In this document: positions 8,375-11,979 of the stretch, one piece after another
Layout of the letters: every line of letters starts with the position of its first letter
How positions within the stretch are numbered: position 1 is the first letter of the stretch
Origin: Octopus sinensis
Lineage: Eukaryota
Assembly (NCBI RefSeq): GCF_006345805.1
Contig: NW_021826705.1
Location: 1-11,979, forward strand
Direction: 5' to 3'
Length of the DNA: 11,979 bases
Program-made: the position numbers and the translations under genes
Notes under the pieces: generated by a model
Told to the model about the DNA's origin: nothing
Database searches by the model: none
The model's input: the letters and a program-made list of their open reading frames with translations, nothing else

Positions 8375-8606
8375 TATCACTTTCTGGGCAACAGGAATGC
8401 AGTCAACTATATCGAAATAGTCGACAACAGGCTGGTAAACTTTCAAAAGTTGGGAACAAATATGAGGATAAAACTGCACAATTTCCACGGTCACCTTCCT
8501 AAATTCCCTTACAATTTTGTTGACACAAGTGACAGGCAAGCAGAATATTTCCATCAGGAGATAAATTCAATGGAACAAGGTAACAAAGAAGGTGAATCTT
8601 GTATAT

Positions 8607-9082
8607 TCATCATCATCATCATCATCGTTTAATGTCCGTTTTCCGCGCTAGCACGGGTTGGACGGTTCGACCGGGGTCTGGGGAGCCAGGGGCTGCCCCA
8701 GGCTCCAGTCTGATCTGGCAGTGTTTCTACAGCTAGATGCCCTTCCTAACGCCAACCACTCCGCGAGTGTAGTAGGTGCTTTTTACGTGTCACCTGCACA
8801 GGTGCCAGAGGGGTCTGGCATCGGCCACGATTGGTTGGTGCTTTTTTTATGTGCTACCGGCACAGAAGCCATTCGAGGCAGGGTTGGCATCGGTCACGTT
8901 CGGATGGTGCTTTTTATGTGCCACCGGCACAGAAGCCAGTGGAGGCTGCACTGGCAACGGCCACGTTCGGATGGTGCTTTTTATGTGTCACCGGCACAGG
9001 TATCACAACTACTGTTTCCATTGATATTTGGTTCGATGTTCATGTACATGCACTTGACTCAACAGGTTTCCTCAAGCACAGG
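8607..9082 (-). mobile_element. RTE LINE 3' UTR fragment (same family as 3730-4706)
   Basis: Has the (CAT)n tail and is collinear with 3730-4270. It carries 3 minisatellite units plus a partial (GGTGCTTTT at 8775, 8837, 8906, 8973). Confidence 0.88.
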
Positions 9083-9243
9083 GATGACTATTGCTGAAAC
9101 TTGGCTCCTGATATTTTTAATGTTCAGCACTCAAGCAAATCATTCAAGCGCGAATTCAGGAGAAATTACTCACCATTTAATGATGGGATTTTGCAGAAGA
9201 AATTTTAAGATTTTTACAAGAGTGGACTCATATTTTTACAATC

Positions 9244-9268
9244 GTCATATCTCTGCCAGAGATATGAC
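9244..9268. repeat. 25-bp palindrome
   Basis: GTCATATCTCTG-C-CAGAGATATGAC, with perfect 12-bp arms. Confidence 0.9.
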
Positions 9269-9310
9269 TACTGAAACAATGTAAATATTTTGAGTTCCAT
9301 TACTGATGTG

Positions 9311-9352: not shown

Positions 9353-9532
9353 CTCCTACGGCCGTTTCTGGGGGTGTGGTTGAATTTTAACATATTACAC
9401 GTAAAGTAACGCTCAACACGCTTATTCCTCTTCTGATTCAAATTGGTTCTTATAATATGTAATAACTCTAAAAATGTGCTATATGGAATTCGCTAATATG
9501 AATATTCATCATTCTCAACGTTAATTTTCCAG

Positions 9533-9624
9533 AAAATAATTGTTTTGCTTTTGCTTTTTTTTTTTTTTCATAAATGGAAGAGGAAGAATTAGCGAATTTC
9601 AATATCAACGGAGTCTTCATCGAT
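9533..9624 (+). CDS. Candidate exon of a divergent protein tyrosine phosphatase domain (YINA-motif region); 5' boundary is 9533 or 9581
   Basis: Ends ...EEELANFNINGVFID|GTAAGT in phase 0, like PTP DYINASFID|. Two phase-1 acceptors are possible: ttttccAG|9533, or aAG|9581 downstream of T14. The longer form contains an in-frame TAA at 9571-9573. Confidence 0.6.
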
Positions 9625-9719
9625 GTAAGTAAATTCGACATTTTTTTTTAGCGTTTTGCTTCTAAAACTTCGCCGCATCTTTCTATCCTGCTTAATTTCT
9701 TCTTCATTTTATGATATTA

Positions 9720-10199
9720 CTAGCAGCATAGCCCGGCATTGCCCGGGTATGTAAGAGCCCCTGGAACAGACATGATGCTTGCTGTGAATTTTAAAAAAAT
9801 TCCTGCCAATTTGTGAAAGATATTGTCGAAAATATGTCATCTTGAATTTGAACGCGATTTCCCAAAATGGCATGATTTTATCGATTTTTTCTGATGGTAA
9901 GGTATTGCATGGAAAACTAACGTTTGGTGAAAATCGATTGCAAGTTGCGAAAACTACAACAGAAAATGTGTTGCAAATAAAAAGCTTAGATTCTCGACCC
10001 CATGTCGAATCTATCGATTTTTTTCAGAACTGGGGGACCTTTTCAAAATTTTCGCTGCGTTAGTTTCGAATTATGACATTGGGCTATGTGTGTGTCAAGT
10101 TTCATCAGAATCGGTTGAAAGCCGTGGTCAGGGTGAGGGTACAACCTGACAGACACACAGACACACAGACAGACAAACTGCTGTTTATATAGAGAGAGA
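9720..10199 (-). mobile_element. Non-autonomous Helitron (Lep1-like architecture), 480 bp
   Basis: On the plus strand: a|CTAG at 9720, hairpin cccgg-cattgc-ccggg at 9732-9747, aagtttcatcagaatcgg, a (GACA/CA)n tract at 10148-10175 and tttatatagagagaGA|t. On the minus strand this is A|TC...hairpin...CTAG|T. Confidence 0.85.
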
Positions 10200-10333
10200 T
10201 TTTTCTTTCGTGTGATGGTAAATCAGCAAATGAAAGTAAAACGGATTTAATATACCGTTTAAAAAAATTATATTTTTTACCTTAGATATTGGTTTACTTG
10301 TGAAAATAGTTCATGGCTACAATAAATAAATAT

Positions 10334-10921
10334 AGGCGCAGGAGTAGCTGTGTGGTAAGTAGCTTGCTTACCAACCACATGGTTCCGGGTTCAGTCTCAC
10401 TCCGTGGCATCTTGGGCAAGTGTCTTCTGCTATAGCCTCAGGCCGACCAATGCTATGTGAGTGGATTTGGTAGATGGAAACTGAAAGAAGCCTGTCATAT
10501 ATATGTATATAAATAGGCGTAGGAGTGGCTGTGTGGTAAGCAGCTTGCTTACAAACCACATGGTTCCGGGTTCAGTCCCACTCCGTGACATCTTGGGCAA
10601 GTGTCTTCTGCTATAGCCTCAGGCCGACCAATGCTATGTGAGTGGATTTGGTAGATGGAAACTGAAAGAAGCCTGTTGTATATATATATATATATGTATA
10701 TGTGTGTATCTGTGTTTGTCCCCCTAGCATTGCTTGACAACCGATGCTGGTGTGTTTACGTCCCCGTCACTTAGCGGTTCGGCAAAAAAGAGACCGATAG
10801 AATAAGTACTGGGCTTACAAAGAATAAGTCTTGGGGTCGATTTGCTCGACTAAAGGCGGTGCTCCAGCATGGCCGCAGTCAAATGACTGAAACATGTAAA
10901 AGAGTAAAAGAGTAAAGAGTA
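10334..10921 (+). mobile_element. SINE family A with a tandemly duplicated head (head-head-body)
   Basis: Heads start at 10334 and 10515 (period 181). One 3' half follows, with the tail ending at 10921. Confidence 0.9.
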
Positions 10922-10940
10922 TATCTAGATCAGTCGGCAT

Positions 10941-11156
10941 TTTGCTGTTTGTTCCTTCTCGAGCCATGCCTGGCTCATAAGGGCCGGTTTCCCGGTTTCT
11001 TGGCGTATAGGTTCCCCACCTGGACGAGACGCCGGTTCATCGCAGGTGAGCTGCAAAATGCAGGAGGAAAAAGTGAGAGAAAGTTGTGGCAAAAGAGTCA
11101 GCAGAAGATTCGCCATTACCTTCTGCCGGAGCCGCGTGGAGCTTAGGTATTTCGCT
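10941..11156 (-). mobile_element. SINE family B, tail type 3, head missing
   Basis: The minus strand agcgaaatacctaagctccacgcggctccggcag...cacaactttctctcac matches the family B body. A third unrelated tail follows (cctgcgatgaaccggcgtctcgtccagg...gaaaccgggaaaccggccc), V-SINE-like by recall. Confidence 0.75.
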
Positions 11157-11513
11157 ATTTGACTGTGGCCATGCTGGAGCACGACCTTTTGTCGAGCAAA
11201 TCTTTGTAAGCCTAGTACTTGTTCTATCTGTCTCTTTTGCCGAACCGCTAAGTTACGGGGACATAAACACACCAGTATCGGTTGTCAAGCGATGTTGGGG
11301 GGGACAAACACAGACATACAAACTCATATATATATATACATATACATATATACGATGGGCTTCTTTCAGTTTCCGTCTACCAAATCAACTCACAGGGCTT
11401 TGGTCGGTCCGAGGCTATAGTAGAAGACACTTACCCAACGTGCCACGCAGTGGGACTGAACCCGGAACCATGTGGTTGGTAAGCAAGCTACTTACCACAC
11501 AGCCACTCTTGCA

Positions 11514-11559
<46 letters not shown>

Positions 11560-11718
11560 ACGGGCTTCTTTCAGTTTCCGTCTACCAAATCCACTCACAA
11601 GGCTTTGGTCGGTCCGAGGCTATAGTAGAAGACACTTGCCCAAGGTGCCACGCAGTGGGACTGAACCCGAACCGTGTGGTTTGGTAAGCAAGCTACTTAC
11701 CACACAGCCACTCCTACG
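11157..11718 (-). mobile_element. SINE family A, head-head-body arrangement, tail lost
   Basis: One copy at 11157-11516, then (TA)n at 11517-11557, then an extra head at 11558-11718. Confidence 0.88.
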
Positions 11719-11775
11719 TATAGTTTTTTTTCCTTTTTATATTGTTCATCTGTTTTCGTTTTATTGTGTAAATAG

Positions 11776-11901
11776 GGACCTTCCTGTGAAAATCAATTCC
11801 TTGTCACGGAAAGACCAGTAGAAGGGAAAACTGTGAATTTCCTGAGGTTTGTAAGCGAAAACTGTTATCTGAATATCGTGGCCTTCTTTCATTCAAATCG
11901 G
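11776..11901 (+). CDS. Candidate exon of a divergent protein tyrosine phosphatase domain (TQGP and DFW motif region)
   Basis: Long pyrimidine tract, TAG acceptor and CGG|GTAAGT donor. It is 126 nt, phase 0-0, and only one frame is open: GPSCENQFLVTERPVEGKTVNFLRFVSENCYLNIVAFFHSNR. It aligns without gaps to the PTP pattern GY....YIATQGPL..T..DFWRM.WE.....IVML. Confidence 0.75.
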
Positions 11902-11953
11902 GTAAGTTTAGAAATGTTTTGATTTCACATTATTTAAAGCTATCACTGACTGT

Positions 11954-11979
11954 ATCATCATCATCATCGTCATCATCAT
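11954..11979. repeat. (ATC)n tract, possibly the tail of a third RTE copy
   Basis: Same trinucleotide as the tails at 3730 and 8607. It is cut by the window edge. Confidence 0.6.

What the first reader, a model, noticed from the sequence alone, without database searches (positions are those of the whole stretch)
9533..11901. Hidden host gene: two exons of a highly divergent PTP (probable pseudophosphatase) domain
Neither exon is in the ORF track. Joining 9624 to 11776 across a GT-AG intron of 2151 nt gives ...NFNINGVFID|GPSCENQFLVTERPVEGKTVNFLRFVSENCYLNIVAF. This aligns ungapped to receptor PTP domains (for example [47 protein letters not shown]), and the intron falls at a position I recall as conserved in PTP genes. 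Three normally near-invariant motifs are altered: YINA to NING, TQGP to TERP and DFW to NFL. That points to a catalytically dead D2-like domain of a lineage-expanded PTP family. The catalytic motif lies outside the window, so inactivity is inference.
Basis: partly seen in the sequence, partly recalled or inferred. Interest (0 to 1): 0.7.

Follow-up and report, generated by a model that had tools for sequence, protein, structure and literature searches.

The report
Unannotated octopus dead-phosphatase domain exons
Two short coding exons hidden among transposon copies belong to a fast-evolving, almost certainly inactive tyrosine-phosphatase-like domain of an octopus receptor phosphatase gene whose counterparts are already annotated in other Octopus species, so the finding is real but ordinary.

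Summary
The finding holds. Exon 2 (11776-11901), the GT-AG intron (9625-11775, 2151 nt) and the junction ...NGVFID|GPSCEN... are real. An annotated Octopus sinensis protein (XP_029644739.1, LOC115218885) starts MNGVFID|GPSCENEF..., across the same junction. Both exons, their splice sites and their flanks are colinear with O. vulgaris and O. sinensis loci at 78-80% DNA identity.

Substitutions against O. vulgaris fall 8/6/21 by codon position (p = 0.001), and dN/dS is about 0.22. These are coding exons under purifying selection.

One correction: an in-frame TAA at 9571-9573 means exon 1 cannot code from 9533. The coding part is at most 9574-9624.

The window peptide alone gives only a sub-threshold Pfam Y_phosphatase hit (E 0.098). 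The O. sinensis relative scores 63 bits (E 3.9e-17), models as a classical PTP fold, and matches membrane-distal D2 domains best (PTPRG D2).

In the relatives the catalytic motifs are degraded: WVD, HSSDKFHKSG or YCSKNFHKSG, and no Q-loop. Active-type PTP exons lie 3.7 kb upstream on one gap-free O. sinensis stretch. A dead D2-like domain is therefore supported, though inferred for this copy.

"Lineage-expanded family" is not supported: I found four annotated proteins, at what looks like one locus per species. Novelty and interest are low.

The parts
9574..9624 (+). Exon 1, maximal coding extent: MEEEELANFNINGVFID, the degenerate 'DYINASFID' motif-2 strand of a PTP domain. The true 5' edge is uncertain: either the ATG at 9574 or an acceptor AG at 9579-80, 9581-82, 9585-86 or 9591-92.
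   Evidence: frame, stop, ATG; 80% identity to EDELAKFNMNGVFID at L001 18439-18483; conserved donor, TAA-ATG and a 3-nt in-frame indel; the O. sinensis CDS of XP_029644739.1 starts inside the equivalent exon.
9571..9573 (+). In-frame TAA stop immediately upstream of the ATG.
   Evidence: frame-2 translation ...FFFFS*MEEEE.... Conserved in O. vulgaris.
9385..9573 (+). Non-coding sequence upstream of exon 1 (intron or 5' leader) that is conserved with the O. vulgaris and O. sinensis counterparts. It includes a pyrimidine tract and a conserved AG at 9531-9532.
   Evidence: the whole block 9385-9635 is 78% identical; indels of 1 and 4 nt here, so it is not coding.
9625..11775 (+). Phase-0 GT-AG intron of 2151 nt (GTAAGT ... 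AATAG). It contains several SINE copies and at least two other repeat fragments.
   Evidence: The counterpart introns are 2260 nt (L001) and 2179 nt (L002). Only 10196-10336 is colinear with them; the SINE copies match elsewhere in those loci.
10322..10921 (+). SINE head-only copy followed by a full SINE copy, in + orientation, inside the intron.
   Evidence: repeat families D2, D5, D8 and inverted pairs I2, I4-I6; these copies match non-colinear positions in O. sinensis.
11157..11731 (-). Full SINE copy plus a head-only copy, in - orientation, ending 45 nt before the exon-2 acceptor. They form 190-217 nt inverted repeats (84-88% complementary) with 10322-10713.
   Evidence: I2, I4, I5, I6, D13.
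11776..11901 (+). Exon 2, 126 nt, phase 0 to 0: GPSCENQFLVTERPVEGKTVNFLRFVSENCYLNIVAFFHSNR. It covers PTP motifs 3-4 (TQGP to TERP, the DFWRMVWE helix to NFLRFVSE, the IVMLT strand to NIVAF).
   Evidence: tblastn E 2.9e-12, 71% identity to XP_029644739.1 residues 8-45; same 126-nt exon in L001 20744-20869 and L002 12201-12326; splice sites conserved; dN/dS 0.25; in the relative's model these residues form strand, helix, strand.
11902..11979 (+). Start of the next intron (GTAAGT donor). The remaining exons of the domain (YWP-like, WPD-like, signature motif, Q-loop, stop) lie beyond the window.
   Evidence: donor and first ~50 nt conserved with O. vulgaris; in the relatives the next exons lie 3.5 to 16.8 kb downstream.

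Best explanation
The window is octopus nuclear DNA, rich in SINEs and microsatellites. It carries two consecutive protein-coding exons (at most 9574-9624, and 11776-11901) joined across a 2151-nt phase-0 GT-AG intron.

They encode the motif-2 to motif-4 segment of a classical protein-tyrosine-phosphatase fold: one core strand, a strand, the 'DFWRMVWE' helix and the 'IVMLT' strand.

The gene is the counterpart of O. sinensis LOC115218885 (XP_029644739.1), O. vulgaris CAI9733297.1 and O. bimaculoides A0A0L8GIH0. It is either the ortholog in another octopod or a diverged paralog.

That domain is most likely the membrane-distal (D2) domain of a receptor-type PTP. Its catalytic machinery has decayed: the nucleophile Cys is Ser or sits in a broken P-loop, the P-loop Arg is Lys, and the WPD and Q-loops are lost.

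By analogy with other RPTP D2 domains, I infer that it acts as a non-catalytic module that docks partners or regulates the upstream D1.

Shown here: the exons, the junction, the homology, the PTP fold of the relative, and purifying selection. Inferred: inactivity of this particular copy, its linkage to a D1 in one transcript, and the scaffold role.
For: - Sequence and frames.
- Specificity of the weak direct signal: the only Pfam hit is Y_phosphatase. All 15 PDB hits are PTP-domain proteins in the same register, the best being D2 stretches of PTPRS, LAR and PTPRG.
- Close relatives: P0004 is 69% identical over exon 2.
- Family membership of the relatives: XP_029644739.1 scores E 3.9e-17 and 63 bits over profile positions 31-231. 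The O. bimaculoides fragment scores E 7.9e-12.
- Same junction in an annotated model: XP_029644739.1 begins MNGVFID|GPSCENEF.
- Colinear conservation: exons, splice sites and flanks match at 78-80%.
- Coding constraint: substitutions fall 8/6/21 by codon position (p = 0.0011), dN/dS is 0.22, and the coding indel is 3 nt against 1 and 4 nt upstream.
- Fold: the model of the relative has pLDDT 88 and pTM 0.85. The listed Foldseek matches are all classical PTP domains, with TM up to 0.87 for PTP epsilon D2.
- D2 character: PTPRG D2 scores 30.3 bits against 5.6 for D1, PTPRA D2 20.0 against 8.1, and the C-terminal tail aligns to the end of PTPRA D2.
- D1 upstream: exons encoding WPDHD, VVHC|SAGVGRTG, the Q-loop and an LEHQFQ linker lie 3.7 kb upstream on the same strand in a gap-free O. 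sinensis stretch. Window 6520-8528 is colinear with the DNA just downstream of those exons.
- Shared intron positions: the O. sinensis D1-type exons and the D2 share two further intron positions, HC|S versus HS|S and QKR|IQ versus PDC|ES.
- Dead motifs in the relatives: AIHS|SDKFHKSG, VYCSKNFHKSG, WVD or WAG, and IPDCESY in place of QTxxQY.
Against: - The window peptide alone is below Pfam's gathering score (12.7 against 20.9 bits).
- It has no relative sharing 5-mers in the 5.8-billion-protein set.
- No D1 exon and no motif-1 (NxxKNRY) exon of the D2 was found in the 9.5 kb upstream in the window, nor between D1 and exon 1 in O. sinensis.
- The in-frame TAA before the ATG is conserved. This leaves open that the domain is N-terminally truncated or translated on its own.
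- Catalytic motifs of this copy are outside the window.
- The public gene models of the relatives are fragmentary or chimeric, and both assemblies have gaps at the key breakpoints.
- No transcript data could be consulted.
- The dN/dS estimate rests on only 58 codons.
Confidence: 0.8

Rival explanations
1. The exons belong to a stand-alone, N-terminally truncated pseudophosphatase gene. Translation would start at the ATG at 9574 (or at an equivalent site), and the protein would lack the pTyr-recognition (motif 1) segment. On this reading it is not the D2 of a receptor PTP.
For: - A conserved in-frame TAA sits directly before a conserved ATG.
- NCBI models the O. sinensis counterpart as a separate 216-aa protein that starts inside this exon.
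- No motif-1 exon was found between D1 and exon 1.
- The AlphaFold model of the 216-aa protein is confident without the N-terminal ~60-70 residues (target lengths).
Against: - The upstream D1 exon ends with a consensus phase-0 donor (CAG|GTAAGT), read off L002, after an LEHQFQ linker motif that normally opens a D2.
- Phase-0-compatible acceptor AGs exist inside exon 1 in both species.
- Similarity is best to D2 domains, including the D2 C-terminal tail.
- The ATG has a weak context, with T at -3 (read off).
Confidence: 0.2
2. The two exons are relics of a decaying, non-functional duplicate (a pseudogene). They retain open frames only by chance.
For: - Amino-acid divergence from the relatives is high (29% in exon 2) and normally invariant structural motifs are altered.
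- The downstream exons of this copy are unseen.
- The peptide is absent from all predicted proteomes searched.
- The intron has been invaded by several SINEs.
Against: - Substitutions are biased to the third codon position (p = 0.0011) and dN/dS is 0.22.
- Both frames are open, all three visible splice sites are consensus and conserved, and the only coding indel is 3 nt.
- The O. sinensis and O. bimaculoides counterparts keep an open frame through to a shared C-terminus...LYSNFVQ.
Confidence: 0.1
3. Exon 2 encodes an ankyrin-type repeat, not a PTP segment. Many ankyrin-repeat proteins matched the query stretch ...NCYLNIVAFFHSNR.
For: In one search, 11 of the 17 hits with E up to 0.001 (P0005-P0007 and P0009-P0017, except P0008) match query residues ~21-58. 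Each of the six I examined shows the NGHLDVVxFLHxNR ankyrin motif or strong Pfam ankyrin hits.
Against: - Those scores mostly sum 2-5 repeat copies per protein.
- The window peptide hits no ankyrin Pfam model.
- The one close relative (69-71% identity) is a PTP domain at E 1.5e-6 to 3.9e-17, with exon 2 aligned to profile positions ~38-80.
- In the model, this segment is strand, helix, strand inside a PTP fold.
Confidence: 0.01
4. The open frames and the PTP resemblance are chance in AT-rich, repeat-rich non-coding DNA.
For: The direct Pfam hit is sub-threshold (E 0.098), and the exons are short (51 and 126 nt).
Against: Conserved counterparts with the same boundaries in two other genomes, an annotated protein spanning the junction, and codon-position bias.
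Confidence: 0.01

Closest known systems
Octopus sinensis LOC115218885 (XP_029644739.1, 216 aa, 'uncharacterized protein'), with O. vulgaris CAI9733297.1 ('RPTP mu-like') and O. bimaculoides A0A0L8GIH0
   Same: - The same two exons, with the same 126-nt exon 2, the same phase-0 junction (NGVFID|GPSCEN) and the same splice-site sequences.
- Colinear flanking DNA at 78-80% identity.
- 80% amino-acid identity in exon 1 and 71% in exon 2.
   Different: - 29% amino-acid divergence in exon 2.
- The window copy keeps R, V and E of the DFWRMVWE helix (NFLRFVSE), where O. vulgaris and O. sinensis have YFLKCLIN.
- The internal Met used as the start in XP_029644739.1 is Ile here.
- The intron carries different, lineage-specific SINE insertions.
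- Whether the window is an ortholog from another species or a paralog could not be decided.
Inactive membrane-distal D2 domains of vertebrate receptor PTPs (PTPRG/PTPRZ D2, PTPRA/PTPRE D2, R2B PTPRK/PTPRU D2)
   Same: - Classical PTP fold with the best sequence match to D2 (PTPRG D2, E 1e-8).
- Structural match to PTP epsilon D2, TM 0.87.
- Loss of catalytic residues.
- Position downstream of an active-type domain in O. sinensis.
- By analogy, D2 domains recruit substrates or regulate D1 (PMC9640194 and PMC7320164 titles and abstracts).
   Different: - Only 15-20% identity.
- Structural motifs 2-4 are also degraded here.
- No motif-1 (KNRY) exon was found.
- The neighbouring upstream O. sinensis gene model, which may be the N-terminal part of the same receptor (inference), has F5/8 type C and EGF-like domain hits rather than a vertebrate RPTP ectodomain type.
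- No functional data exist.
Pfam PF00102 Y_phosphatase (classical PTP domain)
   Same: The window peptide aligns to profile positions 29-71 in the expected register. The relatives pass the gathering score.
   Different: The window fragment alone is below threshold (12.7 against 20.9 bits). It covers only about 18% of the profile.

Membership tests
Classical PTP domain (Pfam PF00102 Y_phosphatase) | Sequence match to the family profile at or above the gathering score | tested here: inconclusive
   Window peptide: the only family hit, E 0.098, 12.7 bits against a 20.9-bit cut-off, profile positions 29-71. Relatives that are 71-80% identical to these exons pass: XP_029644739.1 at 63.1 bits (E 3.9e-17), CAI9733297.1 at 28.4 bits, A0A0L8GIH0 at 45.7 bits.
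Classical PTP domain (Pfam PF00102 Y_phosphatase) | PTP alpha/beta fold | tested here: met
   Tested on the O. sinensis relative, not on the window fragment itself. AlphaFold2 gave pLDDT 88 and pTM 0.85. The Foldseek matches listed are all classical PTP domains, TMq 0.75-0.87. Residues matching the window exons form strand, strand, helix, strand.
Classical PTP domain (Pfam PF00102 Y_phosphatase) | Conserved structural motifs 2-4 (DYINA, TQGP, DFWxMVWE, IVMLT) in register | tested here: inconclusive
   In register but degenerate: FNING, TERP, NFLRFVSE, NIVAF (HMMER alignments). Retained residues are I, N, F-I-D-G, T..P, F.R.V.E and IV.
Catalytically active PTP | HCx5R signature, WPD loop and Q-loop | not testable with these tools
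   These exons lie beyond 11979. In the relatives the feature is not met: AIHS|SDKFHKSG (O. sinensis/vulgaris), VYCSKNFHKSG (O. bimaculoides), WVD or WAG, and IPDCESY in place of QTxxQY.
Receptor-PTP membrane-distal (D2) domain | Greater similarity to D2 than to D1 domains of tandem RPTPs | tested here: met
   Window peptide: in each of the three printed alignments (all PTPRS) D2 scores above D1 (for example 9.7 against 6.8 bits). The next three hits (LAR, PTPRF, PTPRG) also have their best stretch at D2 positions. Relative: PTPRG D2 30.3 against D1 5.6 bits, PTPRA D2 20.0 against 8.1, and the tail aligns to the PTPRA D2 C-terminus.
Receptor-PTP membrane-distal (D2) domain | Encoded downstream of an active-type D1 on the same strand and in the same transcript | tested here: inconclusive
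   In O. sinensis, D1 C-half exons (WPDHD, VVHCSAGVGRTG, Q-loop, LEHQFQ linker) lie 3.7 kb upstream on a gap-free stretch. Window 6520-8528 is colinear with the DNA just after them. However, no D1 exon is detectable in the window, and public models split D1 and D2 into separate genes. Transcript linkage was not testable.
Receptor-PTP membrane-distal (D2) domain | Complete domain including the N-terminal motif 1 (NxxKNRY) | tested here: not met
   No such exon was found upstream in the window or between D1 and exon 1 in O. sinensis by tblastn, Pfam scan of the + strand frames of L002 6000-10030 (O. sinensis only), or conserved-block inspection. A degenerate candidate (…DLEYCYNISSVI, L003 23633-23737) runs into a stop and has no counterpart in the window.
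   Four annotated proteins from three Octopus species share this domain. Only one PTP-like representative appears among 1.84 billion 50%-identity clusters. The only second copy seen (O. sinensis, L003 1-6615 against 25959-33740, 94-97% identical) ends at an assembly gap and is single-copy in O. vulgaris.

The most novel reading that the evidence does not exclude
The domain is an octopod-specific, rapidly evolving pseudophosphatase that has lost the phosphotyrosine-recognition segment (motif 1). It is made as a stand-alone cytosolic protein from its own start codon at 9574, uncoupled from the receptor's D1. This would be a truncated D2 recruited to a new, non-catalytic role, rather than an ordinary D2.
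Probability: 0.15. Interest if true: 0.35.

Novelty: new member of a known kind. Interest (0 to 1): 0.18.

Why it matters
The main value is for annotation. Two real coding exons lie between SINE copies, and no predicted protein in the databases searched contains them. The public models of their counterparts are fragmentary or chimeric and sit next to assembly gaps. The counterparts are modelled as 'mu-like', 'epsilon-like' and 'uncharacterized'.

Biologically this adds one more example of a receptor-PTP D2-type domain whose catalytic residues and normally invariant structural motifs have drifted while the reading frame stays under purifying selection. That pattern fits the view that D2 domains are kept for non-catalytic functions. 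It does not open a new question.

Tried and rejected
1. A word-indexed homolog search with the joined peptide found nothing.
2. The exhaustive HMMER search gave one true relative plus ankyrin-repeat and low-complexity hits. I rejected those as repeat-summed or compositional.
3. I looked for the D2 motif-1 exon and for D1 exons upstream. tblastn of the four Octopus proteins against the window, sensitive blastn of the O. sinensis exon regions, a Pfam scan of the three + frames of L002 6000-10030, and open-frame inspection of the conserved blocks all found none. The conserved block 8382-8528 is open in the window. By my reading it looks like a transposase remnant, and its O. sinensis counterpart has stops.
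4. A search with the D1-type half of XP_036365301.1, aimed at a full-length two-domain ortholog, returned only distant PTPs at 30-49% identity.
5. Rfam and tRNA scans of the window found nothing.
6. Pfam scans of other window ORFs found nothing significant. These were the LINE-like tail, the 208-aa ORF in the 66-nt repeat element and the transposase-like block.
7. A literature check for conserved intron positions in PTP domains found only work on FN3 introns.
8. The O. bimaculoides protein has no contig on record, so I could not test whether the window is its locus.
Full report
**What the window is**

The 11,979-bp window is eukaryotic DNA of 31-53% GC. It is packed with (TA)n/(CA)n microsatellites and many copies of one ~400-nt SINE in both orientations. 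No Rfam family or tRNA was detected. The closest relatives of its coding content are all from Octopus, so this is octopod nuclear DNA. The species could not be determined.

**Checking the observation**

- Exon 2 (11776-11901) reads GPSCENQFLVTERPVEGKTVNFLRFVSENCYLNIVAFFHSNR. It sits between ...AATAG and GTAAGT.
- Exon 1 ends ...AACGGAGTCTTCATCGAT|GTAAGT at 9624.
- The intron is 2151 nt, GT-AG, phase 0.
The frame has a TAA at 9571-9573 directly before an ATG at 9574 (numbering corrected).
- The coding part is therefore at most 9574-9624 (MEEEELANFNINGVFID). Candidate 5' edges are the ATG, or the AGs at 9579-80, 9581-82, 9585-86 and 9591-92.

**Direct family signal**

- The joined peptide hits a single Pfam family, Y_phosphatase. 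The score is sub-threshold (E 0.098, 12.7 against 20.9 bits), on profile positions 29-71.
- All 15 PDB sequence hits are PTP-domain proteins aligned in the same register (receptor-type PTPs, plus PTPRQ). The top ones are D2 stretches of PTPRS, LAR/PTPRF and PTPRG.
- A word-indexed search of 5.8 billion proteins found nothing. No predicted protein contains these exons.

**Relatives**

An exhaustive HMMER search of 1.84 billion representatives returned one close hit, P0004, 69% identical over exon 2. It also returned ankyrin-repeat and repetitive proteins whose scores mostly sum several repeats. I rejected those.

P0004 is O. vulgaris CAI9733297.1, 'RPTP mu-like'. Its relatives are:
- O. sinensis XP_029644739.1 (LOC115218885, uncharacterized, 216 aa);
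- O. bimaculoides A0A0L8GIH0 (167 aa);
- O. sinensis XP_036365301.1, 'epsilon-like'.

XP_029644739.1 starts MNGVFID|GPSCENEFLVTEIPEEGKTVYFLKCLINKGYLNIVAFFDPSG... It therefore spans exactly the proposed junction. It hits PF00102 at E 3.9e-17 (63 bits, residues 2-200 on profile positions 31-231).

An AlphaFold2 model of it is confident (pLDDT 88, pTM 0.85). Its listed Foldseek matches are all classical PTP domains, with TM up to 0.87 for PTP epsilon D2.

**Genomic conservation**

I fetched the O. vulgaris locus (L001, OX597827.1) and the O. sinensis loci (L002 and L003, CM016872.1).

- Exon 1 has a counterpart, EDELAKFNMNGVFID, at L001 18439-18483 and L002 9977-10021.
- Exon 2 has a 126-nt counterpart at L001 20744-20869 and L002 12201-12326.
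- The counterpart introns are 2260 and 2179 nt.
- Window 9385-9635 and 11754-11958 align at 78% and 80% identity.
- Conserved features are the donor GAT|GTAAGT, the acceptor ATAG|GG, the second donor GG|GTAAGT, and the TAA-ATG pair.
- Further colinear blocks (window 6520-6609, 7386-7572, 7743-7959, 8382-8528, 10196-10336) show that the whole 5.4-kb region is homologous. It is interrupted by SINE insertions specific to the window.

**Is it coding and constrained?**

- Between the window and O. vulgaris the two exons differ at 35 positions, distributed 8/6/21 over codon positions 1/2/3 (binomial p = 0.0011).
- Nei-Gojobori dN is 0.15 and dS is 0.69, giving dN/dS of 0.22.
- The only indel inside the coding part is 3 nt. 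The indels just upstream of the ATG are 1 and 4 nt.
- The other two frames of exon 2 contain stops in both species.

These are real coding exons under purifying selection. The sample is small, at 58 codons.

**Dead enzyme?**

The catalytic motifs of this copy lie beyond 11979. In the relatives:
- the signature HCSAGVGRTG is AIHS|SDKFHKSG (O. sinensis/vulgaris) or VYCSKNFHKSG (O. bimaculoides);
- WPD is WVD or WAG;
- the Q-loop QTxxQY is IPDCESY.

The nucleophile position differs between species (Cys or Ser), and the P-loop Arg is Lys in both versions of the signature. By established PTP enzymology, such a domain is not expected to hydrolyse phosphotyrosine. For the window copy this is inference by homology.

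**D2?**

- By sequence, the relative matches D2 better than D1 of tandem RPTPs: PTPRG 30.3 against 5.6 bits, PTPRA 20.0 against 8.1. Its tail EYLQKESILYSNF aligns to the C-terminal end of PTPRA D2. The protein stops a few residues later.
- In O. sinensis, active-type exons lie upstream on the same strand. They read ...FFFRKWPDHDIP...VVHC|SAGVGRTG...MVQKR|IQLEFIYD...LEHQFQ, at L003 17111-20766. That is 3.7 kb upstream of exon 1, in a stretch without assembly gaps.
- The last of these exons ends at a consensus phase-0 donor after an LEHQFQ motif, which typically opens the next PTP domain (read off).
- Two intron positions are shared between this D1-type domain and the pseudo-domain: HC|S against HS|S, and QKR|IQ against PDC|ES.

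Together this supports a tandem D1-D2 receptor PTP. The neighbouring upstream O. sinensis model carries F5/8 type C and EGF-like domain hits.

**Caveats on the D2 reading**

- No D1 exon and no motif-1 (NxxKNRY) exon was found in the window's 9.5 kb upstream, nor between D1 and exon 1 in O. sinensis.
- The public models split the region into separate genes.
- XP_036365301.1 and CAI9733297.1 look chimeric.
- Both assemblies have N-gaps exactly at the points where they disagree: L003 13485-13585 and L001 17397-17497.
- The 94-97% identical second copy in O. sinensis (L003 1-6615 against 25959-33740) ends at such a gap. It may be a haplotig artefact.

**'Lineage-expanded family'**

This is not supported. 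Only four annotated proteins from three Octopus species carry this domain. There is one PTP-like representative in the exhaustive search. The picture is a single, fast-evolving locus, with about 65% identity between the O. bimaculoides and O. sinensis proteins.

**Mechanism, with status of each step**

Shown:
- the exons, the junction and the homology;
- the PTP fold of the relative;
- purifying selection.

Inferred:
- The window encodes the core strand, strand-helix-strand segment of a non-catalytic PTP-fold module.
- This module most likely sits C-terminal to an active D1 in a receptor PTP.
- It acts by binding partners or modulating D1, as described for vertebrate D2 pseudophosphatase domains (PMC9640194 and PMC7320164, abstracts).

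The main rival is a stand-alone, N-terminally truncated pseudophosphatase translated from ATG 9574.

**Verdict**

The object is an unannotated counterpart of already annotated, though uncharacterised, Octopus genes: a new member of a known kind, of low interest.

Noticed in passing
window 10322-10921 (+) and 11157-11731 (-): The intron holds two SINE copies in each orientation. They form 190-217 nt inverted repeats, 84-88% complementary, and the last ends 45 nt before the exon-2 acceptor. In the pre-mRNA these could pair into long dsRNA, which might be an editing substrate or affect splicing.
   Followed up: no
window 4301-4692 (-): Two overlapping ORFs...RGRGRPRKTWDEVVKHDLRALGL...DRGLWRYAV and ...MIRWMCNV.... 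By my recollection they look like the C-terminal tail of a LINE ORF2, broken by a frameshift. Pfam gave no significant hit.
   Followed up: partly
window 3760-4250 and 8624-9050: Two copies (about 90% identical) of an element that contains 66-67 nt tandem repeats (families D7, D9, D10). The copy at 8624-9050 is inserted between blocks that are colinear with O. sinensis. The 208-aa ORF at 8658-9284 overlaps it and has no significant Pfam hit.
   Followed up: partly
window 1493-2286: A composite repeat: 187-nt units at 1493 and 2100 (99% identical) flank two tandem 183-nt units at 1733 and 1917 (95%). Related units occur several times in introns of the O. vulgaris and O. sinensis counterpart gene.
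   Followed up: no
window 7386-8632: Sequence conserved with O. sinensis (L003 21639-22181, 73-80%). It is open for 48 codons at 8382-8528, continuing ...NMRIKLHNFHGHLPKFPYNFVDTSDRQAEYFHQEI.... By recollection it resembles a transposase-derived motif. The O. sinensis counterpart has stops, and there is no Pfam hit. It is an old shared insertion, not a PTP exon.
   Followed up: partly
window 7638-7700 and 7900-7962: An exact 63-nt direct duplication 262 nt apart (family D15, 100% identical).
   Followed up: no
L003 1-6615 vs 25959-33740; L003 13485-13585; L001 11773-17497: O. sinensis carries a 94-97% identical second copy of the D2 N-terminal exons that ends at a 100-N gap. O. vulgaris has four 100-N gaps just upstream of its exon 1. 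The models XP_036365301.1 and CAI9733297.1 join exons across these regions and look chimeric.
   Followed up: partly
window 4894-5391 vs L001 16916-17330: This window stretch matches, at 84-86% and in reverse orientation, a small O. vulgaris contig bounded by gaps (L001 15090-17396). That contig may be mis-oriented in the scaffold, or the stretch may be a low-copy repeat.
   Followed up: partly
window 11848-11901 (peptide SENCYLNIVAFFHSNR): The end of exon 2 resembles the NGHLDVVxFLHxNR ankyrin-repeat motif closely enough to pull in many multi-repeat ankyrin proteins at E 1e-7 to 1e-3. I judged this convergent or compositional.
   Followed up: yes
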